Of a DNA stretch of 64,000 nucleotides, positions 1,350 through 51,929 are shown one piece after another. This stretch comes from Takakia lepidozioides (Eukaryota; Plantae; Bryophyta): contig CM060732.1 in the NCBI GenBank assembly GCA_030704615.1, positions 61,814,001-61,878,000 of the forward strand. Reading direction: 5' to 3'. The first letter of the stretch is position 1; every line of letters begins with the position of its first letter. The notes under the pieces were generated by a model that was not told the DNA's origin, searched no databases, and saw only the letters and a program-made list of their open reading frames with translations. The translations under genes and the position numbers were made by a program.

Positions 1350-2680
1350 TAAAACCCATGGAATAGCCGGGTTCCAAGGGCAGCCCCAAGCGCCCTATTT
1401 ACATGGATCGCCCCATCATGTTCTCCTGGCCTGACTTTCAGCCTATTCATTACTGTTCATCCCATACCATGGCGGTAGACTGTTATATACGGCCTAACCT
1501 ATACTTGTTTGAGGTTATCCTAGAGCTTTGTGGCTGTATCTGGCCCCTTCATTAGTCTACGGGCCAGATCTGTTTGTAATCTAGGCACCCCGTGACATGC
1601 TGCCACGTGGGGGTATTGCCTCATCCTAGGTTTTGGGTATAAGCTTGTTCCTAACCTTGAGTCTGGGCCCTTCTTCACGTATGTACAACCTGGTGTACGA
1701 GCTTCTGGACGTGCTCTGTGAGCTTTGGATATGTGTGTTAGCTCTGCATATGCTATACGTGGGATCCTTTACATATTCATCTCTCTTCTCGTGCTGTAAA
1801 GCCCGCTCCTTCCGAGCTCTTATACCCCTAGTTTAACGTGCATTTGTGAGGATGGGAGAATCTCATTCAAGCACAAAATATGGTGGAGTCTTGTGGGTAG
1901 TGGCGGCTCCGCACGTATAGTGATTTTGCGCGGTTATCTCGGGTTCAATCTGGTTTTGGAAGAAAGCTTTTTGGCTTAAGAGGAAGTTGTGATGGCGGCG
2001 GCAGCTTCGCTCTTCGCGTTGTGCACTTGCATTGGTTTGTCTTGCTTGTTCATTGTGTGTTGCAATGGCGTCTGCAGTTTTCTTTAGCTTGTCAAGCGAG
2101 AGAGAGAGACAGCGGCTCGATTTTGGTTAAGATAAAACTGAGAGTGGAGGTTGCAGGCTCTAACGTGGTGGGTTCCAGCCAGTTAGTTGTAGGCGTTCCT
2201 GTATCTGCTCCCAGTTTGCAGGTGGTGGATGGTCATCCAATCTCGGAAGTGCCTGTCGTCCCTTGATCACACAATGTCATGTGTATCATTTGAGCTTTCC
2301 ATGTGTTGTAGATACTGGATGTACTATGTCTGCCATTCCCTTGCAGCCTCTTTGCAGATAGTGAGAGTCTTGGGCCTCAAGTTGACCCATACACAAGGCA
2401 TAGATGTCATCATTGCAGATGGGTCAAGGTATGAGCCCTTGGGGCTGGTCACTATCCCTATTGGAATTCATAAGAAAGAGGTCTTGATTACTTGCATAGT
2501 GACAATAGGAGACCAGTTCTTGTTGGGATTGGATTGGATGACAGGGGCTCAAGCTACCATCAACCTTGGTAACAACTCCTTACGATTTCCCAATGGAGAA
2601 AGACATGAGGTTGTGGTGCCTCTCAAGACTGTCAAAATGCATGCAGGCACTCTACTGCCAACCTTTCCCAAGTTCAAGTC
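1350..2680 (+). mobile_element. Heavily deleted LTR-retrotransposon remnant related to the 16690-49844 element (LTR-like segment, PBS-like TGGTGGAG, protease fragment)
   Basis: Patchy identity to the LTR at 24627-25057/49375-49844. TGGTGGAG at 1881 matches 25058. ORF 2229-2687 (ADGSRYEPLGLVTIP...GDQFLLGLDWMTGA) is homologous to 28490-28919. Left boundary approximate. Confidence 0.65.
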
Positions 2681-4171
2681 ATGGTAAGCATGAGATGAGG
2701 GAAAACTCATAAGTGTAGGCAAGGCCGCACGTGGTTGCCCCACTCGATTGACCACCGCCAAAGGTGGACGATCATCATGTCGCACTCTCTGTGGTTGCCT
2801 CCCTTGGTCCAAAATGCCCTCAATCATGAGGTTGGGTGGCCGTTGAATGGAATCATAGGCTCTCTTGAGCAACTCTGGTGGTGCAAGATTGGTCCACCAC
2901 AACCTAGGCCTATGTGCCCGTGAACCCACTGCAGCTGCTTCCCACAATACAGCTGGTCCAATCCATGACCGGATTTGATGCACACTGGCCATAACCCTGG
3001 CCCGAGAATCCCCCATGAGAGGAACATTCTCCATGTAAGCTGGAGGTTGCACTTGCCTCACCTGCAAGTCACGCAACACTCGCATCTCTCATAACAGATG
3101 CGATCAAGCATCATGCAAACCATTACCATGATGTCGCGGCCCTTTGCCTTGAGGGCAGGGGGTCGGGACACATGAGGGGCTGCCCCTGTGGTGGGGGCAG
3201 CGGCAGCGATAGGTATGGGGGGCTGAAGCACCCTTGAGTGCCCAAGGCACTCACGGAGGCGGAGGCGGAGGCGCTCACTAGGTGGAGCCCGGCACACCGG
3301 GTTGCGGTGGGGGTGGCTCCACAAGGGGTGGTGGGAGCTTAGCGGGACTTAGTGGGGGTGGCATAGGACTCACCATGGGGGCGGAGACCTCGTGGTGGGA
3401 GTCGTGGGGAGTCTTGGGACTCATCACGGTCCATAGGGGTCGTGGTGAGTGGGCCAAGACTCACCGCGACTCATCACCGGGGGTCGAGGGTTTTCGTGGT
3501 GGTTCACCATAAAATGGCATGGCTGGTTGTGAAACCCCCGCGGACAGCTACAGAAGTATATATAGGGAGTAGTAACCCCGAGAACGGTGCAAGCCCGTTG
3601 GTGACCAAAAACTAGTGAGTAAGCGAGCGAGCCGGAAAGCGACCAAAGAGTGGGGAGCTGTTCCGGACTGCCAACTACCAAAGGGAATTCCCGCTGGTTC
3701 CAAATCGGTGGAGGATTCTCGGGGAGAACAAAGGGGGACCGTTATGCCCCGGTGAGCTGCCGAAGCTCCAAGTTGGCCGGACGGCCAGGTTGGGAGTCAG
3801 GCGCGCGCATCAAAGCGAGTAACTATGACTTGAGGGGAAGCTTACCGAAGTGAGGTGCGCGACACATGACCTGCGGGAGAATGTCATTGGCAAGGCCATC
3901 CGGCTATCACCAAGTCAGTGGCACCATGTCGGTCCAAATCATCTGCCCCCAACAAAGTAATGTCTACTGACAAGGCTTTTTGGTATCCTTGAATTGCTGA
4001 GAGAGGCAACAACTCGGGATAATGACGTGTGAGTAAGGCAACATGGCGCATAGAAATACGCCGAGCAATCTCATCCTTCTCCACATACAAGTACTTGCGT
4101 ACTTTAACCCCAACATGCAACACTTCTGCAAGCCCAGTGCTAATGCCTCCAAACATGTCTAGTAATCAAAT
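2680..4171 (-). pseudogene. DNMT3-like C5 cytosine DNA methyltransferase domain within a retrotransposon pol, split by a solo LTR and C-terminally truncated
   Basis: Motifs in order: I*LLDMFGGISTGL (I), YLYVEKD (II), DIT (III), DLVIAGWPCQ*HSPAG (IV), GLHDA*SHLL*E (V), YMENV (VI), SRAHRPRLWWTNL (VIII). The frame is continuous after removing 3132-3864 and one TSD copy. Motifs IX-X are absent. Confidence 0.9.
3132..3864 (+). mobile_element. Solo LTR of the Galadriel-like family found at 31280-37940
   Basis: TGTCGCGGCC...GGTGCGCGACA termini. Closely matches the reverse complement of LTRs 31280-32001 and 37217-37940. 5-bp TSD CATGA at 3127-3131 and 3865-3869. Confidence 0.95.
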
Positions 4172-5023
4172 CCCTGAGTCAGGTTGTTTCCAAGTAATGG
4201 GCACTGTGTCCAAAAGAGCTAACTGAGGAGGTCCAGGTGATGTAACTAAACTCCCCTCACTCATCAATGGAAATGCCACCTGCCATGCTTGGTGCATACA
4301 CTCGCCTGCTACTCGCTGCAAATTCCCAATCGTACCCCACAGTGGAATAGGCACAGGCACATGTGGAAGCAACTCAGCCTTGTATGCCAATTGTTTGTCC
4401 TCATCAGATGGTGGCCTATCATCTGCATGGTTATTGCTCTCCAAGAGCTCACCACCCCAAGCCACCACACCTGAGAATGCAGCCAATGTTGGCATCATGT
4501 TCCTATGATCCACCGCTACATTCCCAATAAACCACACTGGGAGCAGTGCACGTCGGCCATCTCCTGACTGCCACTCCGGCCGGTAGGATGTCATTTCCTC
4601 CCAAAAGTCCAGAGTAAATCCCATGGGTTACAACACCGCCCCACTAATAAGCACATCATATGACATTGCGTCCGTAACAATGGCTTTGGCTCTCATGATT
4701 GAGCCATCCGTAGGATGATCTGGCTATAGTCGAATGAAGAGCTCATGGCGTGTGATCCCCCAGGCCTTCTCTGAACCACCCAAAGATGTCTGAATTTGGA
4801 AAGGACAAAGCTCCAAATCCGCCTCCATAAGGGCCAAGCCCACAATTGCTGCTCTCCCCAACATCAATGGTTGTGCTCCTAAGTCCAACAAGACCCACAG
4901 TGGCCTATACCTCCTCCCGGTTGGACCACCCAACTGAAACACTCTATTCTGATTGTCCACCAGGACTACTCCAGGAGTCACCATGCTGCACTCAATGGCT
5001 GGCCTAGCTGGCAACTCCTGCAA
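4172..5023 (-). pseudogene. Retroviral-type aspartic protease plus linker, in frame with the methyltransferase
   Basis: VLLDLGAQP (degenerate D-S/T-G) and AIVTDAMSYDVLISG. ORFs starting at 5023, 4624 and 4156 are all in the same frame, separated only by point stops. Confidence 0.8.
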
Positions 5024-6311
5024 CTGTGTAGTTGCCGCTTGTCATGGCGCAGCTGTGGCTGTCTTCACCCTTGAATCCAGGGCATCCATCATAACAATGG
5101 GTCTCCTCATGCCCATACTTGCCACAATGCCCACACTGTAATTGTGTAGGCTGTGTCTGTGTCGACCCTTTGCCTCTCTTCGGGCACTCCTTCTTGACAT
5201 GGGACCTCCACAATCCCAACATGACACACTTGTCTGTTGCTGGCCTGAGAATGAAGGAAGAGACCTTTGCATTTGAGATCCTCTCTGACCTTCCTTGGGC
5301 TTTGTCTGAGCTCCCTTGTTGCCTTGAGTACGTTGGGGAGTTGGTTGTTGTTGGCTAGGAACCCCATTTCGTTGTGTCTTCTTGCCAAAACCCACCATAA
5401 CCACCCGTTCCTCCACCATATCGAGTTTTATCCGCTCGGCTAGCAAAAATACATTTGCTAGGGTGGGTTGGGCCACTTGTAGGAGAGTTGCATCCCGCAC
5501 CCTTCTCCTCAGCTCCTTGTCCAATATCCCATACCAAAATTGGACTACCTGAGCTTCCGTAATCCCCTGGGTTACACTTACCAAGCACCTCATGCGAGTG
5601 TAAGCCTCCCTCAAACTCTCAGTAGGCTTGCGTTGGAACTTTTGCAAGCTTCGCAACTTCTCTGTCCTCTCCCTGGTAGTTTCTCCTTAACTCCTCGAAG
5701 AGCTCCACAACTAGATTAAAGGCAGGCACATGTGTTGGTGCAATGGCAGGAGTTGCAGTGGATGTCCCAACTGATCCTGACCCACTTATTCTACTGCTGC
5801 TTGTTCAAGCCGCTGGTGTAGCTGCCGGTGTCACCACTGCCCTTGTGCCTCTAGTGATTGAGACATAGTCAGGTGACCAATACACCCGTCATTCCTCAAT
5901 TTCCACCTCATGTCCCCGCCTAACCTCATGGTAGTCATCCATGGGTGGCCCCTCAAGGTGCTGAAACAGCCCCTTCCATGCCATAAATGGTGTAAATAGT
6001 TGTGGATTACGCATCTGCTGCAAATCACACCAACTGTCAAACTCTTGTACTAAGTCATCTAGCTCGATGGTGCCCACAGCTCCAGAGTACCTACGTGGCC
6101 CCTTGGTAGCTCCATACATCTCCTCCATCGTGTCCCACAACAATGGCACGGAAATGGCTTGCACCCTCGGCGAGAATCCTCCTGACTCAGAGTCTGAACC
6201 CTCCTTAGAAGACACTGAAGGTGAAGGTGGCCTAAACCGCACACCTCGTCTTGTGTACCCACTAGTATTGTTGGTGCTCGTATCGACACTCCCCTCAGCA
6301 ACCGGTGGCAC
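5004..6311 (-). pseudogene. Retrotransposon gag (fragmented) with two zinc knuckles
   Basis: ORFs 5889-6311 and 5042-5656 with gag-like QKFQRKPTESLREAY. Knuckles CWDCGG.HVKKEC (frameshifted) and CGHCGKYGHEETHC. Confidence 0.8.
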
Positions 6312-7079
6312 CTCCGTGATGAAAACTCACAACCACACCTATTGTAAGCTTGTCTCTAATCCCCCTCTCCACAATGTAACCTGGTAGAGATCAACCTATT
6401 GCGACTTATGGTTTAGACTACTAGGTTCGTAACAAAAACCTGCACCTGCACCTGCATCCACCGCAAACACTCCTATGGTTGGCTGGTCATCACCCCAGCC
6501 TCACCACTGACAACATGCTCTAGGATTGGCCGGTGATCAAATCCGGACCAACCTCCTATGAAAACAAGCGCCCATACAAAGCTAACATGGCGCACAGTCA
6601 AGCATGCAAGTGTGGAGGGGATCCAAACACAAGAAAATCAAGACAGCAACTCCCCCACACCACAAACACTCCACAGTGTCGCTCCTGCAAGACACCCCAA
6701 GCTTGGATTTTTGCGTTGACCATTACAGTCTGATGGAGTCCAGGGGACCCGGTCCACGACGGAATCATCGGTACGCAGTCTGGAGCATTTAGGCGCGCAT
6801 AAGGAGCTTGGAAAATGATAGAGCATGTCGGGCTCGTGGGCGATGCAAATGAGTCACAGAAAGAGCTCCTTGCACACATAAGATACAGCAAAGATTTGGA
6901 CAGAGTTTCCAGAAATAATGTTGTTTTGGGTTTCTCATTTTTTAAGTACGAGAGTCTTAAATTCGATGTCGTTCATCATGATCTTATGAATCGTTACAGA
7001 GATGGGGATATAGAGAAATCTGGGCTATCAAAGATACCAAACCCGGACTGACTCTTGCCTCCACCTACGGAAAGGTTTT

Positions 7080-9776
7080 GGCCTACAGAGAGGGTGAAAG
7101 ACTACAAAGAAGAGAGACTAAAGCAACTCCTAACCCCAGAATGCTCTCATCCCACTATCCTATCTCAACACTTTCTTGCTGGAGCAATAGACAAAACTAC
7201 CTTTCAAGGGTCTCTCAAATAACTCTCCAGGAGCCTTCAAGATGTCTTTCAAACAATCTCACTAAGGCTCCCAAACCTTGCACAATGGAACTCCAAACTG
7301 TACATCAAAGGCCCCAAGAGCCTGCCAAAACTTGGCCCTCCAGTACCCCAAATAGTCCGCCAAATACCTCTCCAAAGGCTCCAAAAACTCGCCAAATATT
7401 GGCCTTCAAGGACCCCAAATAGTCCTCCAAATACACCTCCAAGAGCTCTTTAAAAGCTCCTCCAAAAGCTCCTCCAAGGACCCCCCCAAAGATCCTCCAA
7501 AGGCAATACTCCGCCAGATACACCTTAGACTTCATACTCTTTTACTAAAACGTATGGTAGGCAAAGTCTCTCCACTTGTATCCATACACTTTTCACAAAA
7601 GAATATGTTGGGCAGTGTGAGCCAGACACTTTTCACAAAACTGTATGGTGGGCAGAATGAGCCATACCCAGTTTTTGAGACTAGGGTTTGTAGAGTAAAG
7701 TAAGAAACACCATACACATTATTGCATCATCCATGCTTCTATCCCAAGGCTTAAGGAGTTTATGTGATGGTGAGAAACACCTTCTTCATGGTCCCCTACA
7801 TGCATGCAAGATTGCATTGTTTTATCTTGCAATGCATTCATCACAAATTGACAAGTTCCTCTTGATCTCCTCGGAACTCATAGCAAGCTAATGTGCCCAA
7901 TGACAAGCGCCAAGCCTTGCTGCAATTTGAATTTTGTATGCCATCTTCCATGTGCTTTCCCTTGCATAGGCTAGTCACACACACTTCCACCTCTTGACCT
8001 ATGTGTTGTTTTCATTCACAATAATGTGTATCCACACCTCTATTCAAGAGCTCATCTTCTCAAACTTGAAGTCATAAGCCCTAAAGAGCATGTTCCACAT
8101 AAACATCACTTGTTTGATCAACCATCCACCACAAAACTTAAGCAAGAAAAGAATGAATACATGAGCTTCACCTTCCCCTTCCTTGACTTGTCTCATGCTA
8201 ATGTATGGTTGAAGTTGCTATGCATGCCTTGAGCCACAACTCCTTTCTTCATGAAGCCACCTCCAATGATCTCCCACATATGCTCCAAGCTCTTCAATGC
8301 TCTAGGCTTGGTTTCACATCATCATGTATAGAATTTTCACCCACATGCTTCCCTTTGGGGTCATCTTGAGCTTCTTGATGCTCTCCAAGTGTTTGTTTTT
8401 GTTGTCTTCAAGCCCTAGCCTATGTAGCTCCTTGGCTTCTCTTCCACAACATGTACCCCCTCATTTAGCAAGCCACCAAGCCTTGTCTCCTCTCAAACCT
8501 TGGTCATTTAAGCTCCTTCACTTGCTAGCTCAAGAGCCACTCCTCTCAAGCTTCAAAGGGCAAAGCTTAAGCCAAAAAACATGCTCCACACATGCACCAC
8601 CTTATACACAAAGGAATGAACTTGCTCACTTCACCTTCTAGCCTCAAGCTTGAAGTTGGAAGCCACATTTGGAAAGTTTACTCCACACATGCGCCACTTG
8701 CTTCACCAAGAGCAATCCAAGACTCATAGAACTAGCAAAAACACTCCCTTCTAGCGTCTTAGCTTGCTTGTTTGTCAACCAAATGAAACCCCACATGGCT
8801 TCATTTCACATAGATAAACAACCACTTCTTAGCTTCTCTTGAGCTACTCAATGCTCCTCAAGCTACCCTTGTTGTATTCCTTCTATGGTGTTTCCAACCC
8901 AAGCATGTGCCGCTCTTTGGCTTCTCTTTCACACCATGAACAACTAGAGCTTGCTCTTGAAACCCTAGTGTCTATCTTCTCCACACACATGACGCTTCTC
9001 TTGTGATGCAAGAGCTCTTTTCCAAGCTCTCAAACCCTTGGTGCACAATAATGCTTATACAAACCCTCAATGTATTATTTTAACCATAGAAGTCACTTCA
9101 TTGGCAAATGGTTGTCACAACACTTGAGATACAAGAGATGACGTTCTTTCTTCTCAAACTTTCAAACCTTTTGCTTTCACACACACAAGACTTTCTCCTT
9201 GCAATACTTGCAAAGTCTTGTAACTCAAAAGCTCTCTCCTTGAGCTCTTCATCTCCTTGATGCAATGCAAACACACTCTCCTTTGCAACACCTTGCAAGC
9301 CTTGTGAGATACTTGAGCTTTTCTTAGCTCTCTCACTCCTTGGTGTACTCCAACACAAGTACTAAACTAATCCTTACATTCTGCACTCACAAGCATAAGG
9401 TCATCTTCTTATAGTGATAAAGTGAACATAATGGAAACACTCCACTCATGAATCCACTCAATCACATAAACTAAGTCAAGCCAAGGGCACCCTTGCTTAG
9501 GGAATCCACCCTACAAAGCCCTCAACACACTCCCTCTCAATACCTAGAGCTATGGAGGTGAAAGAGGCTCATAGACTCTCAACTACAAGAAGATGAGCTC
9601 TCCTCCACACTCACAAGGGGAAAACCCCTCCCCATGTCCCAAGTGAGGCTTGACACCTCACTTGGCATGTGAGACCAAATGATGTCCCAACACACAAAAT
9701 ACAATATAAATATCCAAAATGTCCTAATTAATTAGAAGTAGGTAATTTCTAGTTAACCATGACTAAAACCATGACA
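7080..9776 (-). repeat. Non-coding, compositionally skewed segment; possible long LTR/5' region of the DNMT element
   Basis: No credible ORF; C/A/T-rich, with short tandem motifs at 7260-7500. The minus strand begins TGTCATGG at 9776. No second copy in the window, so LTR status is unproven. Confidence 0.3.
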
Positions 9777-28919: not shown

Positions 28920-31900
28920 CAGAACTCTCACTCCAACCTCAATTGGAATGATTTCTACAAGTTTCAGTCTGATCTTCAACTCTTATATCAGTGACATGTT
29001 CCTAGTGCTGGGGATAGGACAAGGGTGCCCATAGCTATTCCAAAGAATTCTACTCTAATACGTGCACCTCTCAACATCACCATCCCTGCCATGACCCAGA
29101 AGGTGGTCAAGTCTGGCTGTCAAGGACGAGAACATGACTGAATACAAACAAGAAATCAGACTAGAGGTACAAGACTAGACAAGAAGTCAAGGTCGGCGTG
29201 GCCGAATGCATGGTGGGTAAACATGAATCAAGATCATCTTTATAACAATGGACAAGAGTACAAGATACACTCGACTCGAATACTGGAATGCTGGAAACTG
29301 GACTGGGGTACCAGATACTGGAAACTGGACTAGAGTACTGGAAGTTGGACTGGAGTACTGGGACTAGGAACAAGAGTAACTTGAACTTGAGTTGGCGAGA
29401 CTGAAGAATGTCCAGTCTCGCCTCCTATATATACTGGCTACTAGGAGGTTCCCTAAGAGGCTTCCCCAAAGGAGGTTTCTTGATGGAGAAGTTTCCTTAA
29501 ATAAAGGAGGATCTCGATGGAGAAGTTTCCTCCAAAGGAAGCTTCTTGAGCAGTTTCCCAAGTTACTCTCGGTAATTGGGTAAACTCCCGATAACTTGGT
29601 AACTAATGGTAACTTATGGTAAATCATGGTAGATCACAGTAAATTACGGTAACTTTCGGTAACATGGTAACTTGGTAACTTCTGGTATTTATTCCTGGTA
29701 AGTTCCTCTGGGATATGTCTGTGACATCACCCCCTTCTTTAGCGCCGAATTCCTCGAGGAGCGGTAAAATCTTGGACTTGCTTAAAGTTGGAGAACCTCC
29801 ATCTTTAGTGTGTATTAGATACACTGAATGTGGAGTCTTCACCTTGAAGCTAACTTGGCTGACATCATTGTTGTGACGTATTATTGACGTATAGCTCGGG
29901 GCTTAGCTGGATATCGTTGATGAAACTCTTGGACTTTGTCAGATGCATTGGCAAGGTTGGATGAAGGTTCTCACGTTCGTTCGCTGATGTTGTAGCCTTT
30001 CCAATGTACAAAATACTCAACGTTTATACTTGATGCGAGAGTCTAAGACTTCGTCGACTTCATACTCGATTTCCTGATTGATTTCGATTGGTGCACCCAA
30101 CGAGCTAACTTAAAGAACCAAGTCTGATGAGAGGGTAAAACAAAGACCTCTTATGTGTGCAACTTGTGTCTGCAGTGTTCAGAATGACATTTGGTAATCT
30201 GACGGACATTCACTTTTTTACCAACGTTGTCCCACTATTGACTGGGGTCAGAAAAGTATTTATACCACAGCTTCTCCTCATCTCTGTTACCAAAGTACCA
30301 GCTAACATGCAGAATTCAACATGGAAATTTAGGGCAGATTCTGATAAGAGTGGAAAACAGGGTGAAATGTGTAAAGAAGGTGCCTTCTCCTCATCCATGT
30401 TATTTGTTTTTGGTTACTTTCCTGCTGCCACACTGGCAATAACTTGTCAAAATCTCTCCTAACCACCACAGATCCACCCAACGAACTAACTTCCAGAATT
30501 CAATATGCATCTCAGGGCCGAGTCTGCAGCATTCAAAATGACATCTGGTAATCTACAGGCATTCACCTTTTTGCCTCGTTTGTCCTAGCATTGGCTAGGG
30601 TCAGAAAAGTATTCATCCCACAGCTTCTCCTCATCTCTGTTTACCTGTTTTTGGATACTTTCCTGTGTCACATTGGAAATGTAGGGCAGATTCTGATAAG
30701 AGGGGAAAACATGGTGAAATGCGTTGAAGAAGGTATCTTCTCCTCGTCCATGTTATCTGTTTTTGGATACTTTCCTACTTCCACATCAGCAGTAACTTGT
30801 CAAAGTCACTCCTAACCACCACGGATCCACCCAACGAGCTAACTTACAGAGTTCAATACGCATCTCAAGGCCGAGTCTGATGAGAGGGTAAAACAAGCAG
30901 AAATAGGTTGAAGAAGAAGATGCACTCACCACATTGTCCTTGACCTTGTGTCATGACCCATGGAGGATTTCACCGAACATCAACCCTAAAGAACCTCTTG
31001 TGTGTGCAGCTTGTGCCTGAAGCCTTCAGAATGACATTTGGTAATCTGTAGGGATTCACCTTTTTGCCTTGTTTGTCCCACCATTGGCTGGGGTCGTTCA
31101 TCCCACAGCTTCTCCTCATCTCTGTTTACCTGTTTTTGGATACTTTCATGTGTCACATTGGCAGTATCATTTCAAAGTCACTCCAAATTACCATTAAAGG
31201 TTCACTCACAGCTAACTTGCAGAATTCAACATGGGAATGTAGGGCAGATTCTGATAAGAGGGGAAAACACGGTGAAATGTGTCGTGCACCTCAGTTCGGT
31301 AAGTTCCCCTTCAAGTCATAGATACTCGCTTGATGCGCGCGCCTAACTCCCAAACTGGCCGCCGGGCCAACTCGGAGCTTCGACTGCTCACCGGGACATA
31401 ACGGTCCCCCTTTACTCCTCCACAAGACCCTCTCTCAATTTGGGCCAAGTGGAAATTCCCTTTGGTCGATGGCAGTCTGGAACAGCTCCCCACACCTGGG
31501 TCGCTTTCCCCGCACGCTTACTCACTAGTTTTTGGTTGCCAACGGGCTTGCACCGTTCTCGGGGTTACTACTCCCTATATATACTTCTGTGACTGTCCGT
31601 GGGGGTTTCACAAACAACCATGCCATTTTATGGCGAACCACCACGAAAACCCTCGATTCCCGGTGATGAATCGCGGTGAGTCTTGGCCCACCCACCACGG
31701 TCCCATTGGACCGTGATGAGTCCCAAGACTCCCCACGACTCCCACCACAAGGTCTCCGCCCCCATGGTGAGTCCTATGCCACCCCCACTAAGTCCCACTA
31801 AGCTACCACCACCCCTCGTGGAACCACCTCCACCGCAACCCGGTATGCGGGGCTCCACCTAGTGAGCGCCTCCGCCTCCTTGAGTGCCTTGGGCACTCAA

Positions 31901-32606
31901 GGGTGCTTCAGCCCCTGCAACTAATGTTGCCACTGCCCCCACCACAGGGGCAGCCCCTCACGTGTCCCGACCCCCTGCCCTCAAGGCAAAGGGCCGCGAC
32001 ACACACCCCTACCAACAAGGAGTCGATGTCCTCATCGACTTGTCCATTTTGTAGAAACGAACATCCAAGTTGTGGCGTCCCACATCAAGTACCATGGTGT
32101 CCCATGGCAAAGAACCAAACCCCCACTTGACTCTACTCTCTACTAGCTAGTTCGGCTGACTTCCTCCAAGTCCCAGCCAGGGGTGGAGCCTCTCAAGCTC
32201 CACCCAGTGCACTCTTCTTGGCCCACTTCAGGGCCAAGGAGGCAACCCCCCTCGGTAGCGCAGTTATAGTACGCGCACTCGCCAGGTGCGCACTAGCACG
32301 TGAACTCCCAAAGAAAGCACAAGTTTCTTTGTCCCTTGGATGGGAGTCACCCGATTTCGGCACTGCACAAACACACGATTAATCCAATTTACCTCTCCCA
32401 CTTTTATAAGCTAGCATGCATTCTACACACTAGCCAACCATACAATGCATCACCATTCCAAACAAAATAGGACACACATCATTTGGAAACCATTTCATTT
32501 ATAACACAATTTATACCAATACAGGTTTTTGCCAATGGATTCTTGAGCTAGCTAAGCCGGGCTAAGCATGCATTTCCTCCCCCACGCTCTAAGGTTGATG
32601 TCCCCA

Positions 32607-35600
32607 TCAACGCTTCTTCCGCTTTTGAGGTCGCCCTTCAAAAACTGCAACCGCCTCGGATGCGTTTCCCATTTCTGAGGCACGCACCCAAGATGCCTCC
32701 ACATGATGATAGCCCTTCCATTTCACAAGATACTCCGTTTCTTGATTCTTGAACCTCCTCGACTTAAGCACTGCCTCCACCTCGTACTCAGGTTCATTTT
32801 CATGATCCAACAGCACAGGTGGCAGACGCAACACTTGATGCCGATTCGGACGCGCTTCATCTTTGAAGTAAGGCTTCAAAAGGGAGACGTGGAATACCGG
32901 ATGCACCTTGCTGTTTGTCGACAGCTCCAATTCATACACATCCTCATTCACAATCTTCCGGATGCGAAAGGGTCCCGCATACGGAGGTACGAACTTCGGA
33001 CTCACTTCCAGAGGTAGTAAAAAATTCTTGATGTTCAACCAGACCTCCGTGCCTGCCTCAAACTTGACTTCCCTCCGCTTCCGATTTGCCTGCTGTTCAT
33101 ACCGTTTCCTAGCTTTGGCAATGTTGTACTTTGCGAGCTTCAACAAACGCTCACGTTCTTCCAGCACTACTGCTGCTGCCGGTTCATCAACGTCTTGGGC
33201 AGCCCAACTTGTCGGCACCAAAGGTGCTTTTCCATAGACCAATACAAAAAGGGAAACTCCCGTTGCGGAGTGTTTTGTGTTATTATAACAAAACTCTGCC
33301 GCATCCAAGTGCTCCACCCAGTCCGATTGGTCTGCCGACACGTAATTCCGCAAGATCTGCTTCACCACGGAATTCACCCTTTCCGTTTGGCCGTCCGTCG
33401 TAGGTCGGAAGGCGGTGCTCATCTTAAGCCTTGTCCCCATTTTCTTCCAAAGTGCCCTCCAAAATTTACTTGTAAACTTTGGATCGCGGTCTGAGACAAT
33501 ATCCTTCGGGAGTCCATGATGCTTGAAGACGTGGGCGAAGTAAAGTCGCCCCGTCTCCTGCGCCATTGCCGTCTCCTTGGTGGGGATGAAATGGCCCATT
33601 TTACTGAACCTATCCACCACCACCATGATTGCATCGAATCCTTTTGACGGTGGCATAGCAGTCATGAAATCCATCGAGACACTTTCCCAAGACCCCTCTA
33701 GAATCGACAAGGGTTGTAACAGCCCTGCTTGCTTTTTTTACTCGCTCCGGTTTTGTTGGCATGTGGTGCATGTCTTGACATGCTCCTCGGCCTCCTCCCT
33801 CAGTTTGGGCCAGAAATACTCTTTCTTCAAGAGTGCCACGGTGCACTTGGCTCTGCCCTGGCCGACAAGTGGGCCATCATGGCATTCTCTCAAGCGACCA
33901 TCTCTGATCCCTCCTTTCGACACATAGAGACGCTTTTGCTTGTACCGGAGCAGTCCATTTTGCAAGTGGAACTGCGATTTAACCCCCATCCTCAAGTCCC
34001 GCATCACAGACTTCGCTGTCTCATCCTTCCGGTAAGCCTTCCAGATCTTCCTCTAGAGCGCCGTCTCGCCGTTGTACACTAACATGAGCTGCTGCTTTCT
34101 ACTTAAGGCATCGGCCACCACATTGTCCCGTCTAAGTTTGTACTGGATATCCACGTCGAACACCGCCAAAGTGTCTTGTCACCTAAGTTGTTTTGGGGAC
34201 AACTTAGGCTGCGTGGCAAAATACTTCACCGTGACATTGTTCGTGAACACCTTCACCGGGTTGGAACTAATATAGTGGCGCCAAAGCTCTAGGCAATGCA
34301 CCACCGCCTTCATCTCTTTCTCGTGCGTTGGCCACCGTCGCTCCACTTCATTCAGTTTCTTACTTTCGTAAGCCACTAGACGTCCAACCTGCATGAGCAC
34401 ACCCCCAATTGCGAAGTACGACGCATCCGTATGAATCTCAAATGGACGGTCGAACTCCGGGATTTTGAGGACTGGAGCTTCCGCCATCCGCTGCTTCAAC
34501 TCGGCAAAAGCTTGGCCACAAAAGGTGTTCCATACCCAGGCTTTGGACTTACACATGAGGTCTGACAGCGTCCCCGCGATCTTGGCGAAATTTCTCACAT
34601 ACTTCCGGTAATAGGAGGCGAGTCCTAGGAAGGATCGCACTCCCGAGACCGAAGTCGGAGGCTCCCAGTTCAACATCGCCCTCACCTTTCTGTCATCCAT
34701 TTTTATCCCATCTTGTGTAATCACATGCCCCAGGAACTCCACTTTTGTGACCCCGAATTTGCACTTCGAAGCTTTGGCATACAGCTTCCCTTCCCGCAAT
34801 TTCTGGAACACCCTTTTGAGGTGCTCCAGGTGCTCTTCCTTTGTTTTCGAGTACACCAAGATGTCGTCGATGCACACGATCACAAAGTCATCCAACCACT
34901 CCTGGAAAAGGCTATTCATTAGCGTGCTAAAGGTCACGGGTGCGTTGGTAAGCCCAAAAAGCATCACCAAGAACTCATATGAACCATACCTTGTCTTGCA
35001 TGCCGTCTTCTCCTCATCTCCTTCCGCCACTCGAATTTGATGATACCCGGAGCGCAAATCGATCCGGCTGAAATACTTTGCTCTTGCCAACCGATCAAAG
35101 AGGTCGTTGATCCTTGGCAAGGGGTATCGGTTTTTGATAGTCACCTTATTCAAAGCCCTGTAATCGACACACATCCGCAACGTCCCATCCTTCTTGTCTG
35201 CAAATAGCACCGGGGCTCCGTAAGGTGACTTACTCGGCCGGATGTACCCCTTTGACATTAGATCCTTGAGCTGAGTCTTCAGCTCGACCAACTCTCTCTG
35301 GCTCAACCGGTAGGGCGCCTTGGCAGGCGGTTCTGATCTCGGTCTCACCTCAATCTTGTGGTCAACTCCTCTTCGCGGTGGCAAGCCGCTTGGTAAATCC
35401 TCCGACATCACATCCTGATATTTCTCAAAGTCCCTTTGACCCAATTTGGGCTCGGCTCCCCATCGCCTTCTCCTTGTCTTACGTAAAGCAAAAATTAGGG
35501 CTCGTGTGGCTCCTCCACGGCCCACTCCTTTGCTGATAGCAAGTTTATTCGCCCTCCCACTGGGTTGGGCGTTCCGAAACTCGTAAAACTTCGCCACCAT

Positions 35601-35937
35601 TCCCACACGGTAGCGTGACTATTCTCTTACGGCCATCTATGACCGCTCCTGATTTGCTCAAAAAAGTCATCCCCAAAATGAGATCCATTCTATCGATCTC
35701 GTAAATGGTGAAGTTCTCACGTCCCTCCCAACTCCCAAGCTGAAGAGGAACATCGAACTCCAACCTCGTCGCCAATTGAGGTTCTCCTTTAGCAGAACGC
35801 ACCTCAATAGAAGCCCCCACATCACTTGTCGGGAGTCCCAGCTTCTGTGCCGTTGTCGGTGTCATGAAGGAGTGCGACGCTCCTGTGTCCACCAACAACG
35901 ACACGTTAGTTCCGGAAATTATCCCACTCACGAACAA
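32607..35937 (-). pseudogene. pol of the Galadriel-like element (PR, RT, RNaseH, integrase, chromodomain) with stops and a frameshift
   Basis: LLVDTGASHSF; [11 protein letters not shown]; VCIDDIL (YxDD mutated); HTDAS; WESVSMDF; IVSDRD; GQTERVN; YAGPF; EYEVEAVL..YLVKWKGY..SW. Confidence 0.93.
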
Positions 35938-35970
35938 TAACTGACTCCCTTTACGCAGGGCGCCAGTCTC

Positions 35971-37086
35971 CTAATACAACTCACAAGAGTAGTTGCCTAC
36001 CTTGCAAGTCTTGGCAACCACTGCCTCCACCAAGCGGCTAATGGAATCCTCGGACAACTCCGTGGTTGCCCGAGTCATGTTCAATTGTCGGGGTTTCGCG
36101 CACTTTTTAGCCATGTGCCCAGGTTCCCCGCAATTAAAACACACTCCATCGAAGGTCGCCTTCTGTCCGCCATAAGCCGCCGCACCTGGTTTTCCTTTCG
36201 GGGCACCGGGTGCCGTCTTGACGTGTGAGGGCCCTCCCTTCGATTTCCATGTGCCTTTATAGCCGTGTGGCTTATCCCACTTCTTTTTCGGTCGGAATGA
36301 GTCACCTTCCCGCCGGGTCTTCTTGTGGTTCAGCTCCGTACGGCCTTGTCTTTCGCCCCTAGGGACATCCGAGAAACACTCAGCCCTTTCAATTGCCTCG
36401 TTCAAAGTCTTACGTGGCTTCTCCTCCAATTTCCGCCTAGCCCACGGGGCCAGTCCCGCCACAAAGTTGAAGACCATTTCTAGTTTTGCCATGTCCGCGA
36501 CTTCGAGCAACAGCACATTGAAAGCCTGAACATATCCCCGAATGTCATCCGTTTGCTTCAAATTCCTCATCTTGTCTCGGGCGAGCCAGGACGCGTTGAG
36601 GGGCACAAACTGTCTCTTCATAAGTTCCTTGAACCCACTCCAGTTCAAGGTTTCTGGGTTTGGACCTCGGTCGTGAAGGCGTTTCTGCCACCATTGTTGA
36701 GCATAGCCCCTCAAATAGGTGGGAGCCACTTCCACCCGATCCTCGTCACTCAACTTGGCCGCCCGGAAGTACTGTTCTAGCTCCAAGAGCCAGGTGTTGA
36801 GTGCTTTCCGATTTCGGACGCCCTCAAAGGTGCCAGGTTCTTTAGGCTTCACCTTAAACTTTGCCTTAGTGGAAGTGGCATTAGCCGCCTTCAACACGTC
36901 TTTCAACGTCCCGCCAAACTGCGCCAACAACCCTTCCCAAAAGGCTGCTGGCATGGGAGGCATCTGTTGGTCTCTCGGAGCTCTCAAGAATTCCTCGGGC
37001 TCCGACTCCTCAGATTCATCCCGTCCTTGAGTGGCCTCGTTTTCAAACGCATGCATCGCTTCCTCAAATGGCCGCTTCGGTGACAC
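35971..37086 (-). CDS. gag of the Galadriel-like element
   Basis: 371-aa ORF with retrotransposon gag features and a CFNCGEPGHMAKKC zinc knuckle. The track start codon is GTG, so the true start is uncertain. Confidence 0.9.
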   Translation of the reverse strand: MSPKRPFEEAMHAFENEATQGRDESEESEPEEFLRAPRDQQMPPMPAAFWEGLLAQFGGTLKDVLKAANATSTKAKFKVKPKEPGTFEGVRNRKALNTWLLELEQYFRAAKLSDEDRVEVAPTYLRGYAQQWWQKRLHDRGPNPETLNWSGFKELMKRQFVPLNASWLARDKMRNLKQTDDIRGYVQAFNVLLLEVADMAKLEMVFNFVAGLAPWARRKLEEKPRKTLNEAIERAECFSDVPRGERQGRTELNHKKTRREGDSFRPKKKWDKPHGYKGTWKSKGGPSHVKTAPGAPKGKPGAAAYGGQKATFDGVCFNCGEPGHMAKKCAKPRQLNMTRATTELSEDSISRLVEAVVAKTCKVGNYSCELY

Positions 37087-47759: not shown

Positions 47760-49057
47760 ATGGATTATCAGTTACATGTTGCGCTATTCCAGCGATGCCA
47801 ATCAGGGCGTTCACTAGTTGGTCTTTCCGAGTCCTTGCGTAAACAAATTCTCTATCATGTGTCTACTCACCGTTTCATGGGTGATAAGCTTTTCAAGGAG
47901 CTCACTAGAGGGGGAGTGTCATGTTACTTGGAGGTGTCACCACGGAGCCAGCTGAATGCTTTATTGGAGCGTTTCCATTGTTCATTGTATGCAGGTCACC
48001 TTGGTATCAAGAAAACTGTGGCCCGCATCTAAGAAGTTTACTATTGGCTGGGCATTCACCGAGACGTCACGGAATTCATCTCCAAGTGTGAAGGTTGTCG
48101 TGCTAACATTGCTCTCCCTAGGGCCCGGATCTTGTATGAGCTGCAACCTTTGCCTGTCACCCACGTTTTTGCTCGTGTTGGCATTGATTTAGTAGGACCC
48201 CTCGCACTCACATCAAAGGGTCGCAACTACCTTTGTGTTGCTACCGACTACTTGACTAAGTGGGTAGAAATCCGGCCTTTGCGTTCCAAGGCTAGTGATG
48301 TTATAGCTCAGTTCTTCTTCAATGAGATCTTTATGCGGCATGGGTGTCCTCGGGAGATACTAACGGATCAGGGCAAGGAGTTTTGTAACCAACTCCTCAC
48401 GGTGGTTTGCTTCAATTTTGGTGTTAAGCACTCCACCACAACCCCATACCATCCCCAGACCAATGGCCTTACGGAACGCTTCAACCAAATTCTTTGTCGA
48501 ATGTTGGAGAAGAATGGCGCACTTACCAGGGAGTGGGGTACCTTTCTTCCCCCTATTCCCTTTGCTTATCGCACCGCCGTGCATGCTAGCACCAAGAAGA
48601 CTCCATTTGAGTTGTTGTATGGTCGCAAGTGTGTTTCTCCTTTGCATTCTACCCCTCTTATCTGTACTGTTGCTGATCCGGTTGATTTGAGACATTTGTT
48701 GAATATCTTCATGCTCGGCATGCGGTGTCTATTCATGATGCCAAGACAAACATTGGTAAGGCTCAGCTAATCCAAGCCCGTAATTTTAACAAGCGTATCA
48801 TGTATTCTAACATGTTTCAGGTAGGACAAATCGTGTGCGTTCGATTACAGCATGGCAAGCATGCATGCAAATCTAAGCTCAAGATCGATGGTCCATACTT
48901 GATCTATCAGATTTTACGTGGGCGACGTGCTCTCCTTCTTCCACAAAGCTCTAATACTGCAGTGTGGGGGAGACTTGTTTCTTTGACGAACTTGGTGCAT
49001 TCCGAGCTAGTTTTTGATCTTACATGTATCAATGTGGAGGGGCGCACGGTGGGATGA
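47760..49057 (+). pseudogene. Outer element integrase
   Basis: HCSLYAGHLG..CEGC zinc-binding motif, VGIDLVGPL, ILTDQGKEF, TNGLTERFN, GPY motif; one stop and frameshifts. Confidence 0.9.
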
Positions 49058-51266: not shown

Positions 51267-51929
51267 CTACCCACAGTTCTTGGACAGCAGCTGCCCGACC
51301 CCCGACCCCGAGTTTGTGGTCACCTTCACTTCACATTTCTCGTGCACCCAAAAGGAGAAAGACTTATATGACCCAATCTTGACACGCGCTTTCACGTCCA
51401 CTTTAACATACAATGGAACGTTGTCATTGGCGATTGCCGATTGAAGTGAGTTTCCCACATACACCGGCAGCAGAACGTTTTGGGCCTTCAGCTCTGAAGT
51501 CAGTATCGTTGAGTTTTTGTGACCCTGGTAGAAAGCGGGAACATGGCTTGTCCCCAAAGTGTCACCATCATAGGAAGTGTAAACGTTGATCTCATCGTAC
51601 AGGATCCCAATCTTCTTGTTCGGATTTCGGGCTTCCACGGTGTAAGCTATGTCAGCATTCAAAATATGTTGCTGTGAGTTGAGCGAAGAGAGACTGCCGT
51701 CACTTAGACTGCTAGAGTCCTGCAAATTGAAAGTAATGACCTGGACATCTTGCAGATAGTAGTGAGGGGACTTGGGGCGCAGAACTAGCCAGATAACCAA
51801 TGCTGCAAAGCCTAAGAGAATAATCAAGGTCACAAGAAGAGAGCAACACCCTCCGAAGCAGAGAAAACAGGATCTCCTGAAACGGTGATGGCGAGAGTAG
51901 GTGCCAGGTGGTGGGAGATCTCCCTTCAT
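51267..51929 (-). CDS. NDR1/HIN1-like (LEA_2 domain) membrane protein
   Basis: Intronless 220-aa ORF; Cys-rich segment, TM helix ending WLVLRPKSP, ARNPNKKIGILYD, PAFYQGHKN, C-terminal C-x-V...C. Confidence 0.92.
   Translation of the reverse strand: MKGDLPPPGTYSRHHRFRRSCFLCFGGCCSLLVTLIILLGFAALVIWLVLRPKSPHYYLQDVQVITFNLQDSSSLSDGSLSSLNSQQHILNADIAYTVEARNPNKKIGILYDEINVYTSYDGDTLGTSHVPAFYQGHKNSTILTSELKAQNVLLPVYVGNSLQSAIANDNVPLYVKVDVKARVKIGSYKSFSFWVHEKCEVKVTTNSGSGVGQLLSKNCG

What the first reader, a model, noticed from the sequence alone, without database searches (positions are those of the whole stretch)
2680..6311. LTR retrotransposon whose polyprotein carries a DNMT3-like cytosine methyltransferase, apparently in a land plant
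Seen: on the minus strand, gag (two zinc knuckles) is followed by protease, a ~150-aa linker and a C5-MTase, the last three in one frame. Deleting the solo LTR 3132-3864 and one CATGA restores IAGWPCQ*HSPAGHGNGLHDA*SHLL*EMRVLRDLQ...YMENV...SRAHRPRLWWTNL without any frameshift. Known: I*LLDMFGGISTGL and AHRPRLWWTNL resemble DNMT3 (IRVLSLFDGIATGL; AHRARYFWGNL). Motif order is linear, unlike the circularly permuted plant DRM enzymes. As I recall, DNMT-bearing retrotransposons have been reported in dinoflagellates and the charophyte Klebsormidium, and I do not know of them in embryophytes. Inference: this is a fossil of a retroelement family that encodes its own methyltransferase, possibly methylating its cDNA or LTRs to modulate host silencing. 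This copy is dead and lacks MTase motifs IX-X and RT-INT.
Basis: partly seen in the sequence, partly recalled or inferred. Interest (0 to 1): 0.95.

Follow-up and report, generated by a model that had tools for sequence, protein, structure and literature searches.

The report
Dead bryophyte retrotransposon carrying DNMT3 methyltransferase
This stretch is a broken, half-missing copy of a plant jumping gene whose family encodes its own DNA-methylating enzyme; the kind was described from one green alga, and relatives fetched here show that it also lives, some copies intact, in liverworts and mosses.

Summary
On the minus strand, 6311 to 2684 reads gag (two CCHC knuckles), protease, a ~159-aa linker and the first two thirds of a C5 cytosine methyltransferase (motifs I, IV, VI, VIII). 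A 733-bp solo LTR (3132-3864, TSD CATGA) of an unrelated chromovirus splits it without changing frame.

On their own the pieces miss Pfam PF00145. They are nevertheless colinear (tblastn E 1e-108 and 2e-51) with an intact protease-DNMT ORF of the liverwort Calypogeia fissa that does pass PF00145. The same family has more than 20 gene models in Marchantia polymorpha and is also in Sphagnum.

A family profile hits DNMT3A/B/C first (E 6e-24). A model of a Marchantia copy matches DNMT3 catalytic domains (TM 0.83). dN/dS of the domain is 0.16-0.19.

The copy is dead: six stops, no motifs IX-X, no RT-RH-INT.

The kind is known (KnitGypsy-Dnmt3 of Klebsormidium, de Mendoza 2018). I found no report from land plants. 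This scan has already found the family many times elsewhere in this genome.

New here: intact relatives carry one conserved in-frame UAG-CAR-YYA stop between DNMT and RT, a PHD finger after integrase, and A...B-A-B split repeats with 4-bp TSDs.

The parts
6312..7157 (-). 5' leader or terminal region of the element. It holds a ~346-bp insertion (6691-7036) private to this copy.
   Evidence: very many contigs at least 95% alike cover the stretch up to about 7157, then depth collapses. Many contigs join 6690 directly to 7037. Depth inside 6784-6967 is at single-contig level.
5889..6311 (-). gag, N-terminal part, in a different frame from the rest
   Evidence: tblastn to Calypogeia L002 6890-7258: 41% identity, E 9e-29. 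Conserved with the Marchantia gag N-terminus.
5042..5656 (-). gag core
   Evidence: tblastn to L002 7445-7750: 42% identity, E 2e-22.
5094..5221 (-). Two CCHC zinc knuckles. The first (5221-5184) is split by a frameshift. The second (5135-5094) is intact.
4631..5023 (-). Retropepsin-type protease. The active-site triplet reads D-L-G (4891-4871) where intact relatives have D-S-G. In-frame stop codons begin at 4726 and 4630 (first base on the minus strand).
   Evidence: tblastn to L002: 49% identity, E 2e-28. Relatives carry PF13650 and PF13975.
4157..4630 (-). Linker of about 159 aa between protease and methyltransferase. No known domain. In-frame stop codon beginning at 4168.
   Evidence: No Pfam hit. 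Colinear with L002 at 38% identity, E 4e-26. In the model of the Marchantia relative it is mostly below pLDDT 50, apart from one helix.
3870..4156 (-). DNMT3-like methyltransferase, N half. Motif I is at 4153-4130 and motif IV (PCQ) at 3901-3887. A stop codon beginning at 3886 sits where relatives have Gly.
   Evidence: 66% identity to L002, E 2e-38. Alignment A1.
3132..3864 (+). Solo LTR of an unrelated chromovirus family inserted into the methyltransferase. TSD CATGA at 3127-3131 and 3865-3869.
   Evidence: 88.7% and 88.0% identity to the LTRs at 31277-32001 and 37213-37940. Termini are TGTCGCG...CGCGACA. Loose ends of other copies fall at 3132 and 3865.
2684..3131 (-). DNMT3-like methyltransferase, C half. 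Motif V remnant at 3124-3107, motif VI ENV at 3034-3023, motif VIII at 2920-2885, then part of the target-recognition region. Stop codons begin at 3106 and 3091. Homology ends at 2684.
   Evidence: phmmer gives 515 relatives, best 69% identity, E 4e-56. tblastn of the L002 ORF residues 499-658: E 1.7e-51.
2229..2687 (+). Not part of the element. This ORF of another, oppositely oriented repeat abuts the truncation point.
   Evidence: No Pfam hit. Read depth drops about 100-fold left of ~2700.

Best explanation
Window 7157-2684 (minus strand) is a dead, 3'-truncated copy of a Ty3/Gypsy-type retrotransposon family of bryophytes. The family's first reading frame encodes Gag, protease and a DNMT3-type C5 cytosine methyltransferase. 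This copy kept gag, protease, linker and methyltransferase motifs I-VIII. It acquired six in-frame stops and gag frameshifts, was hit by a chromovirus whose LTRs later recombined to a solo LTR, and lost everything from motif IX onward. It therefore does nothing now.

Shown from intact relatives: the element is 10-13 kb. It ends TGTCATG...CGACA with 4-bp target duplications and carries split direct repeats (A...B-A-B). It has one long frame, gag-PR-linker-DNMT, then a single UAG in a UAG-CAR-YYA context, then RT-RNaseH-integrase-PHD.

Inferred: most ribosomes stop at the UAG and make Gag-PR-DNMT. A minority read through to make the replication enzymes, so the methyltransferase is produced in Gag-like amounts. 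The enzyme is catalytically competent: all motifs are kept and it is under purifying selection.

My best guess for its use (about 35%) is de novo methylation of the element's own new DNA copies, which would damp their expression and let the family persist under host surveillance. The integrase PHD finger would steer insertion by reading histone H3 tails.
For: Anatomy of the window copy.
Colinearity with Calypogeia L002, all seven pieces in order. The intact 780-aa ORF maps to the window with E 1e-108 and 2e-51.
PF00145 in that ORF: 40.6 bits against a cut-off of 22. The same holds for Marchantia ORF1.
The family is named in Marchantia polymorpha, Calypogeia fissa, Sphagnum fallax, Sphagnum troendelagicum and Closterium.
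DNMT3 assignment: profile against PDB gives DNMT3A 6e-24, DRM 8e-12 (permuted) and M.HaeIII 1e-8. The Foldseek top 50 are all DNMT3A/B/C, TM 0.77-0.83.
Purifying selection: dN/dS 0.16-0.19 for DNMT, equal to PR, RT and INT.
Single conserved UAG. The motif is described in PMC3542737.
PHD finger after integrase.
Termini, TSDs and split repeats in four Marchantia copies.
Placement of the window copy inside a 9-row liverwort clade, SH-aLRT 99.
High repetition of the family in the source organism's reads.
Against: The window's own pieces do not reach any Pfam threshold and give only E 0.11 to DNMT3C by single-sequence search.
Nothing in the window shows the element's 3' half, its repeats or the UAG. 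These are read from relatives that share 48-67% protein identity.
No enzymatic activity, transcript or read-through product has been observed. The two runs guessed to be RNA cover only the foreign LTR and the private insert.
The proposed use of the enzyme is conjecture.
dN/dS rests on three Marchantia copies and one Calypogeia copy.
No host DNMT3 or Klebsormidium sequence could be put on the tree, so the origin of the domain is not resolved.
Confidence: 0.85

Rival explanations
1. One-off chimera: a retrotransposon fragment landed next to, or captured, a piece of the host's own DNMT3 gene. The shared frame is then an accident of this locus.
For: The window pieces alone are too short for Pfam. 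The element is truncated right after the methyltransferase, and no RT of its own is present in the window.
Against: The same gag-knuckle-PR-linker-MTase order is found in Calypogeia. It also occurs in four Marchantia copies, two metagenome contigs and Closterium, often as one open frame. The domain has no introns. The tree puts the window copy among element-borne domains. Tens of thousands of read contigs at least 95% alike cover the MTase part just as they cover gag.
Confidence: 0.02
2. The family's methyltransferase domain is real but no longer an enzyme. It would serve as a DNA- or chromatin-binding module, as DNMT3L serves DNMT3A, for example to tether the particle or recruit host DNMT3.
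For: Motif X is atypical (LLGQAMD rather than a GN-type motif), as de Mendoza 2018 also notes for the Klebsormidium copies. No activity has been measured. Purifying selection would also be expected for a binding module.
Against: The SAM-binding motif I, catalytic Cys in PCQ, ENV and RxR are invariant or nearly so across 20-25 diverse members. DNMT3L-type proteins have lost these. The model superposes on active DNMT3A/B/C chains.
Confidence: 0.1
3. The enzyme acts in trans on the host genome or on competing transposons rather than on its own copies. It would reshape host methylation to favour the element.
For: It is made on the Gag side of the leaky stop, hence probably in large amounts. The family is very abundant in the source organism, so the combined dose could be high. 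De Mendoza 2018 raises accidental activity on the host genome.
Against: There are no data either way. In Klebsormidium the host methylome looked ordinary despite such elements.
Confidence: 0.2
4. The in-frame UAG between DNMT and RT is a shared inactivating mutation or a spliced-out feature, not a programmed read-through site.
For: Read-through has not been measured. One of six contexts (TAG CAA CAA in L004) departs from YYA. Some Marchantia gene models (P0164, P0175) and the Closterium protein P0248 join DNMT and RT in one product, possibly through predicted introns.
Against: The same codon, always TAG followed by CAA or CAG, sits at the homologous place in six lineages whose neighbouring residues have diverged. 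In L004, L009 and L010 it is the only stop in about 2,380 codons. 45 predicted proteins end after the DNMT. A shared knockout would not leave RT-RH-INT-PHD under dN/dS 0.10-0.16.
Confidence: 0.2

Closest known systems
KnitGypsy-Dnmt3 of the charophyte Klebsormidium nitens (de Mendoza et al. 2018, Nat Commun 9:1341, PMC5890265)
   Same: Both are Gypsy-type elements with an unrearranged, intronless DNMT3-type domain inside the polyprotein. Catalytic motifs are kept and motif X is atypical. Ka/Ks is below 0.2 (here 0.16-0.19). The repeat layout is A-coding-B-A-B, seen here in four Marchantia relatives.
   Different: The host is a land plant (bryophyte). That paper's survey included no liverwort or Sphagnum. 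I could not retrieve K. nitens sequences, so direct relatedness and the position of its DNMT within pol are untested. The UAG-CAR-YYA stop and the integrase PHD finger are not mentioned in the text I could read.
Algal Gypsy elements with RT-RNaseH-DNMT-integrase-PHD order (for example 'pol' of Scenedesmus sp. PABB004, KAF8056149.1, and many metagenome contigs)
   Same: They share a homologous DNMT3-like domain (35-41% identity), a Gypsy RT/RH/INT and a PHD finger after integrase.
   Different: Their methyltransferase sits between RNase H and integrase, not between protease and RT. They form a separate clade on the domain tree (SH-aLRT 98).
SymbioDIRS-Dnmt3 and SymbioLINE-Dnmt of dinoflagellates (same paper)
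   Same: These are retrotransposons that carry a cytosine methyltransferase. The DIRS ones also carry a DNMT3-type domain and split repeats.
   Different: They use a tyrosine recombinase or an endonuclease, belong to a different retroelement class, and are held to be independent captures.
Host DNMT3 enzymes (mammalian DNMT3A/B/C; plant DNMT3 of Physcomitrium, Yaari et al. 2019, PMC6453930)
   Same: The catalytic fold and linear motif order I-X are shared. These are the best profile and fold matches.
   Different: There are no PWWP or ADD domains. The N-terminal partner is Gag-protease. Identity is about 20%. The element domain is intronless and multi-copy.
Chromoviruses (Ty3/Gypsy with an integrase chromodomain), one of which lies in this window at 31277-37940
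   Same: Both have a chromatin-reader domain appended to integrase, presumably to choose insertion sites.
   Different: Chromoviruses carry no methyltransferase.
Tobamovirus-type leaky stop UAG_CAR_YYA (Skuzeski 1991, as reviewed in PMC3542737)
   Same: The stop codon and six-nucleotide context are the same in five of six relatives. It also splits an abundant upstream product from a rarer polymerase-containing extension.
   Different: Here it lies in a retrotransposon, after protease and methyltransferase rather than after a replicase domain. Read-through has not been tested.

Membership tests
C5 cytosine DNA methyltransferase (Pfam PF00145) | Score above the Pfam gathering threshold | tested here: not met
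   The window pieces 3884-4156 and 2549-3085 give no hit even at E 1. Intact relatives pass: L002 ORF 40.6 bits and L004 ORF1 35.5 bits against a cut-off of 22.
C5 cytosine DNA methyltransferase (Pfam PF00145) | Motif I (FxGxG, SAM binding), motif IV (PCQ catalytic Cys), motif VI (ENV), motif VIII (RxR) | tested here: met
   FGGISTGL 4153-4130, GWPCQ 3901-3887, ENV 3034-3023, RAHRPRLWW 2920-2885. They align column for column with 18 relatives.
C5 cytosine DNA methyltransferase (Pfam PF00145) | Motifs IX and X (C-terminal part of the large domain) | tested here: not met
   Homology ends at 2684, before motif IX. Relatives have E(R/Q)ERAMGF and LLGQAMD.
DNMT3 subfamily | Closer to DNMT3 than to DRM, DNMT1/CMT, DNMT2 or bacterial enzymes | tested here: met
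   Family profile including the window pieces: DNMT3A 6.3e-24, DNMT3C 1.2e-22, DNMT3B 3e-21, DRM 8e-12, M.HaeIII 1e-8, DNMT2 8e-6. The Foldseek top 50 are all DNMT3A/B/C.
DNMT3 subfamily | Linear motif order I-X, not the DRM permutation | tested here: met
   Profile positions 4-43, 73-220 and 278-319 map in order onto DNMT3A 6-45, 58-198 and 235-276. On DRM the profile's N-terminal part maps to residues 229-348.
DNMT3 subfamily | Placement inside the DNMT3 clade on a tree that includes host DNMT3, DRM and outgroups | not tested
   No host DNMT3 or DRM sequence was available as a session sequence. My tree holds element-borne domains only and is unrooted.
DNMT3 subfamily | N-terminal PWWP and ADD reader domains of animal DNMT3A/B | tested here: not met
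   Pfam finds none in 1346-aa ORF1 of L004 (alignment set aside; Pfam). The 110-160 aa before motif I are predicted disordered. A PHD finger lies instead at the end of pol.
Ty3/Gypsy LTR retrotransposon | Gag with CCHC knuckles, then retropepsin | tested here: met
   The protease triplet has decayed to D-L-G in the window and is D-S-G in relatives.
Ty3/Gypsy LTR retrotransposon | RT, RNase H, then integrase (Gypsy order) | tested here: not met
   Absent from this copy. Present in that order in relatives L001, L002, L004 and L010.
Ty3/Gypsy LTR retrotransposon | Identical long terminal repeats with TG...CA ends and short TSD | tested here: inconclusive
   This cannot be seen in the window because the 3' half is gone. 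Four Marchantia relatives have TG...CA ends and 4-bp TSDs, but split repeats (A...B-A-B) instead of two plain LTRs.
KnitGypsy-Dnmt3 kind (de Mendoza 2018) | Unrearranged DNMT3 domain, intronless, inside the polyprotein of a Gypsy element | tested here: met
KnitGypsy-Dnmt3 kind (de Mendoza 2018) | Repeat layout A-coding-B-A-B | tested here: met
   Met in relatives L004, L005, L007 and L008. Not testable in the window copy.
KnitGypsy-Dnmt3 kind (de Mendoza 2018) | [quoted passage not shown] | tested here: met
   0.16 (95% bootstrap 0.10-0.26) and 0.19 between older Marchantia copies. 0.18-0.20 against Calypogeia, with dS saturated. 0.46 for a young pair.
KnitGypsy-Dnmt3 kind (de Mendoza 2018) | Sequence relatedness to the K. 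nitens copies themselves | not tested
   No K. nitens protein appeared among the named hits, and none could be fetched.

The most novel reading that the evidence does not exclude
Bryophytes, including the laboratory model Marchantia polymorpha, harbour potentially active Gypsy elements that make a DNMT3-type de novo methyltransferase as part of a Gag-protease-DNMT product. A conserved tobamovirus-type leaky UAG would set this product apart from RT-RNaseH-integrase-PHD. If so, a transposon-encoded methylation writer paired with a histone reader is at work in land plants, and its purpose can be tested genetically for the first time.
Probability: 0.45. Interest if true: 0.7.

Novelty: new member of a known kind. 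Interest (0 to 1): 0.55.

Why it matters
Transposons that carry their own DNA methyltransferase invert the usual picture in which methylation is the host's weapon. What the enzyme is for has stayed open since 2018, partly because the known hosts (dinoflagellates, Klebsormidium) are hard to manipulate.

This window's copy is only a fossil. Following it shows three things:
- The family is widespread and abundant in bryophytes.
- A copy in Marchantia polymorpha has a single open frame, 99-100% identical terminal repeats and a target duplication.
- The methyltransferase lies upstream of a conserved leaky-stop signal, so it is probably made in Gag-like amounts.

That gives concrete, ordinary experiments in a tractable land plant.

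It also matters for annotation. More than 20 Marchantia 'hypothetical protein' or 'DNA (cytosine-5)-methyltransferase' gene models, and one 'Obscuribacterales' MAG protein, are copies of this element rather than host genes.

Tried and rejected
- Pfam on the eight window pieces gave nothing relevant.
- Single-sequence phmmer against PDB gave only E 0.11 to DNMT3C for the N half and nothing for the C half. The assignment needed relatives.
- Direct-repeat search around the element in the window found no LTR pair. The 3' half is missing, so the age of this copy cannot be taken from its repeats.
- The repeat finder and self-BLAST on Calypogeia L002 found no terminal repeats. Another element is inserted at 13.9-16.8 kb.
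- The Marchantia locus L003 holds only fragments.
- Naming the hits: two cluster look-ups of metagenome-derived hits returned no organism names (and part).
- Klebsormidium sequences never appeared.
- The source organism is coded in the look-up of sequencing runs. It could only be narrowed to a bryophyte whose LEA_2 proteins are at most 50% identical to those of Sphagnum and Ceratodon.
- Expression: the two runs guessed to be RNA hold almost none of the stretch, and only the foreign LTR and the private insert. This is no evidence either way.
- A careful IQ-TREE run was not attempted. The tree is the 'quick' kind with SH-aLRT only, and it left out near-identical rows P0152, P0153, P0156, P0163, P0165, P0166, P0168-P0171 and all domain matches under 290 aa.
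- The one-off chimera and chance resemblance readings were considered and rejected.

Full report
**1. What is in the window**

The minus strand from 6311 down to 2684 was translated in three frames and the motifs were placed by coordinate.
- Gag: an N-terminal part at 6311-5889 in one frame, and a core at 5656-5042 in another.
- Two CCHC knuckles: the first (5221-5184) is broken by a frameshift, the second (5135-5094) is intact.
- From about 5060 a single frame runs to 2549.
  - Protease: LLDLGAQ at 4891-4871 and YDVLISGAVL at 4660-4631.
  - About 159 residues without known domains.
  - Methyltransferase motifs I (4153-4130), IV (GWPCQ, 3901-3887), a motif V remnant (3124-3107), VI (ENV, 3034-3023) and VIII (2920-2885).
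- Six stop codons interrupt protease through methyltransferase, beginning at 4726, 4630, 4168, 3886, 3106 and 3091. One more, at 5044, lies at the gag-protease border.

**2. The interrupting solo LTR**

The block 3132-3864 has TGTCGCG...CGCGACA ends and is flanked by CATGA on both sides. It is 88.7% and 88.0% identical to the two LTRs of a complete chromovirus at 31277-37940 in the same window. It is therefore a solo LTR of another family. LTR plus one TSD is 738 nt, or 246 codons, which is why the frame continues. Contigs of public runs from the same organism break at exactly 3132 and 3865.

**3. Is it a methyltransferase?**

Alone, the pieces fail. There is no Pfam hit, and the best single-sequence PDB match is DNMT3C at E 0.11.

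An exhaustive phmmer search with the 178-aa C-terminal piece found 515 proteins. The best were 69%, 64% and 58% identical. The second is from the liverwort Calypogeia fissa and the third from Marchantia polymorpha.

The Calypogeia locus L002 holds all seven window pieces in the same order. It also has an uninterrupted 780-aa ORF with a D-S-G protease and a methyltransferase with motifs I-X. That ORF scores 40.6 bits on PF00145 against a cut-off of 22. It maps back to the window with E 1.3e-108 (5023-3869) and 1.7e-51 (3160-2684), with the break at the solo LTR.

A profile of 20 family members including the window pieces hits DNMT3A at 6e-24, DNMT3C and DNMT3B next, DRM at 8e-12 in permuted register, and bacterial M.HaeIII and M.HhaI at 1e-8.

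An AlphaFold model of the linker plus domain of a Marchantia copy has pLDDT of at least 90 over the domain. The linker is mostly below 50. The 50 best Foldseek matches are all DNMT3A/B/C catalytic domains, with TM 0.77-0.83 by target.

**4. Is it part of the element or a chimera?**

The family is widespread.
- Over 20 Marchantia gene models (Mp_4g09160, Mp_8g17980, Mp_6g11220 and others), several from Calypogeia, some from Sphagnum fallax and S. troendelagicum, one from the zygnematophyte Closterium, and many metagenome contigs.
- Marchantia locus L004 has one 2392-codon frame with a single internal stop. By Pfam it reads DNMT, then RT, RNase H, integrase (H2C2, rve) and a PHD finger. Gag and protease are recognised by homology to the window pieces and by D-S-G.
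- Four Marchantia copies end TGTCATG...CGACA and have 4-bp target duplications (GGTT, CCGG, ATTT, AATT). They carry a ~300-bp repeat A at the 5' end and B-A-B at the 3' end. In L004 these repeats are 99% and 100% identical.

That layout is the one the legend of Fig. 4c in de Mendoza et al. 2018 gives for KnitGypsy-Dnmt3. The chimera reading is excluded.

**5. Selection**

Between the Marchantia copies L004 and L005 the DNMT domain has dN/dS 0.16 (bootstrap 0.10-0.26). That is the same as protease (0.15), RT (0.16) and integrase (0.13). L005 against L008 gives 0.19. The comparisons with Calypogeia give 0.18-0.20 with saturated dS. A young pair gives 0.46, as expected once decay after insertion dominates. 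The domain has been kept by selection while the family spread.

The only internal stop of L004 lies between the methyltransferase and RT. A TAG sits at the homologous place in six lineages:
- Marchantia L004: TAG CAA CAA
- Marchantia L005/L006: TAG CAA CCA
- Calypogeia L002: TAG CAA TCA
- ENA contig L001: TAG CAA TCA
- Metagenome contig L009: TAG CAA CTA
- Metagenome contig L010: TAG CAG TTA

In L009 and L010 it is the sole interruption of 2374 and 2383 codons. Five of the six fit UAG_CAR_YYA, the consensus for efficient read-through in tobamoviruses and other plant viruses (PMC3542737). It also explains why 45 predicted proteins stop right after the DNMT.

I infer that Gag-PR-DNMT is the main product and that the replication enzymes are made by read-through. 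This has not been measured.

**7. Two architectures**

Among the DNMT-bearing hits there are two arrangements.
- One group has PR-DNMT-(stop)-RT-RH-INT: bryophytes, Closterium and metagenomes.
- The other has RT-RH-DNMT-INT-PHD: Scenedesmus and metagenomes.

On a quick IQ-TREE of 122 domains, the second group is a clade (SH-aLRT 98). The bulk of the first is another clade (99). The window copy falls in a 9-row clade (99) with the Calypogeia and Marchantia copies. The tree is unrooted and holds no host DNMT3, so it cannot say whether there was one capture or several.

**8. Host and abundance**

Two LEA_2 genes in the window (51267-51929 and 54270-54902) are most like proteins of Sphagnum and Ceratodon, at no more than 50% identity. 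Calypogeia follows at 40% and seed plants are lower. The host is therefore a land plant of bryophyte grade whose own proteome is not in the collection. Its name is coded in the run table.

In one DNA run of that organism, 26,417 short contigs at least 95% alike lie on 2000-7500. Depth falls about 100-fold left of ~2700 and right of ~7157. Many contigs skip 6691-7036, which is thus an insertion private to this copy. Depth there is not a copy number, but it shows a highly repeated family.

This agrees with the scan's own notes. The same family was flagged many times elsewhere in this genome, and follow-ups reached the same reading. I treated those notes as leads only.

**9. Literature**

De Mendoza et al. 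2018 (PMC5890265) describe DNMT-bearing retrotransposons in dinoflagellates and KnitGypsy-Dnmt3 in Klebsormidium. The embryophytes in their survey were seed plants, Selaginella and Physcomitrella. Later papers cite 'streptophytes (Gypsy-DNMT3)' with that reference only. Searches combining retrotransposon, DNMT3 and bryophyte, liverwort or Marchantia found no report from land plants. The library lacks most subscription journals, so this is absence in what I could search, not proof.

**10. Verdict**

This copy is a dead, truncated fossil. The family is a new member of a known kind, extended to land plants, and it has three features worth following up: the leaky stop, the PHD finger and intact copies in Marchantia.

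The purpose of the enzyme is still conjecture. I favour methylation of the element's own new copies (about 35%). The alternatives are action in trans on the host (about 20%), a tethering or targeting role together with the PHD finger (about 20%), and a non-catalytic role (about 10%).

Interest is 0.55. This is real and useful for the field, but not the first of its kind, and this scan has already found it repeatedly.

Noticed in passing
L004:11835-11843; L005:11850; L002:10874; L001:1051; L009:4969-4977; L010:5024-5032: A single in-frame TAG followed by CAA or CAG and (five of six) a YYA codon sits at the homologous place between DNMT and RT in six lineages of the family. This is the UAG_CAR_YYA leaky-stop context of plant viruses. 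It is the only stop in about 2,380 codons in L004, L009 and L010.
   Followed up: partly
L004:4826-15656 (Marchantia polymorpha chr 4, AP019869.1, gene model Mp_4g09160): An apparently intact, recently inserted element of about 10.8 kb. It has one open frame apart from the UAG, A repeats 99% and B repeats 100% identical, TG...CA ends and a 4-bp TSD GGTT. L005, L007 and L008 show the same A...B-A-B layout with TSDs CCGG, ATTT and AATT.
   Followed up: yes
proteins P0019, P0025, P0029, P0032, P0016 and about 60 others: A second architecture of DNMT-bearing Gypsy elements, RT-RNaseH-DNMT-integrase-PHD, occurs in Scenedesmus and many metagenome contigs. It forms its own clade on the DNMT tree. The domain's position in pol therefore differs between green-algal and bryophyte elements.
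   Followed up: partly
window:31277-37940 (minus strand): A complete chromovirus (gag, zf-CCHC, RT, RNase H, integrase, chromodomain). Its two LTRs are far more alike than either is to the solo LTR at 3132-3864. It belongs to the family that supplied that solo LTR.
   Followed up: partly
window:6691-7036: A ~346-bp stretch that other copies of the element lack; many contigs join 6690 to 7037. Depth is at single-contig level. Two runs guessed to be RNA have contigs covering 6943-7035 that continue into unrelated sequence. The plus-strand ORF 6815-7051 has no Pfam hit.
   Followed up: partly
window:2229-2687 (+): A 152-aa ORF on the opposite strand abuts the point where the DNMT element is cut off. 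It has no Pfam hit. The two repeats meet tail to tail, which suggests a deletion or nested insertion removed the element's 3' half.
   Followed up: no
window:51267-51929 and 54270-54902 (minus strand): Two neighbouring LEA_2 (NDR1/HIN1-like) host genes. Their best matches are Sphagnum and Ceratodon proteins at 44-50% identity. I used them to place the host among bryophytes.
   Followed up: partly
window:47070-47612 (+) and 48132-48770 (+): A dUTPase-like ORF (PF00692, E 3e-5) lies just upstream of an integrase-core ORF. This may be a retroelement that carries a dUTPase.
   Followed up: no
window:12991-13482 (+): An ORF whose last 40 residues match the start of the fibrillarin profile (PF01269, E 2e-8). 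It is probably the first exon of a host fibrillarin gene.
   Followed up: no
protein P0172 (NCBI, 'MAG TPA: DNA cytosine methyltransferase [Candidatus Obscuribacterales bacterium]'): This 455-aa protein, filed under a bacterial metagenome bin, sits inside the PR-DNMT-RT element clade at 49% identity to the Calypogeia domain. It is most likely a eukaryotic retrotransposon fragment mis-binned as bacterial.
   Followed up: no
Marchantia gene models P0160-P0171, P0175, P0177, P0179, P0180, P0183, P0185: More than 20 annotated 'hypothetical protein', 'CCHC-type domain' or 'DNA (cytosine-5)-methyltransferase' genes of Marchantia polymorpha are copies of this element rather than host methyltransferase genes. 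Counts of DNMT genes in that genome should allow for this.
   Followed up: partly
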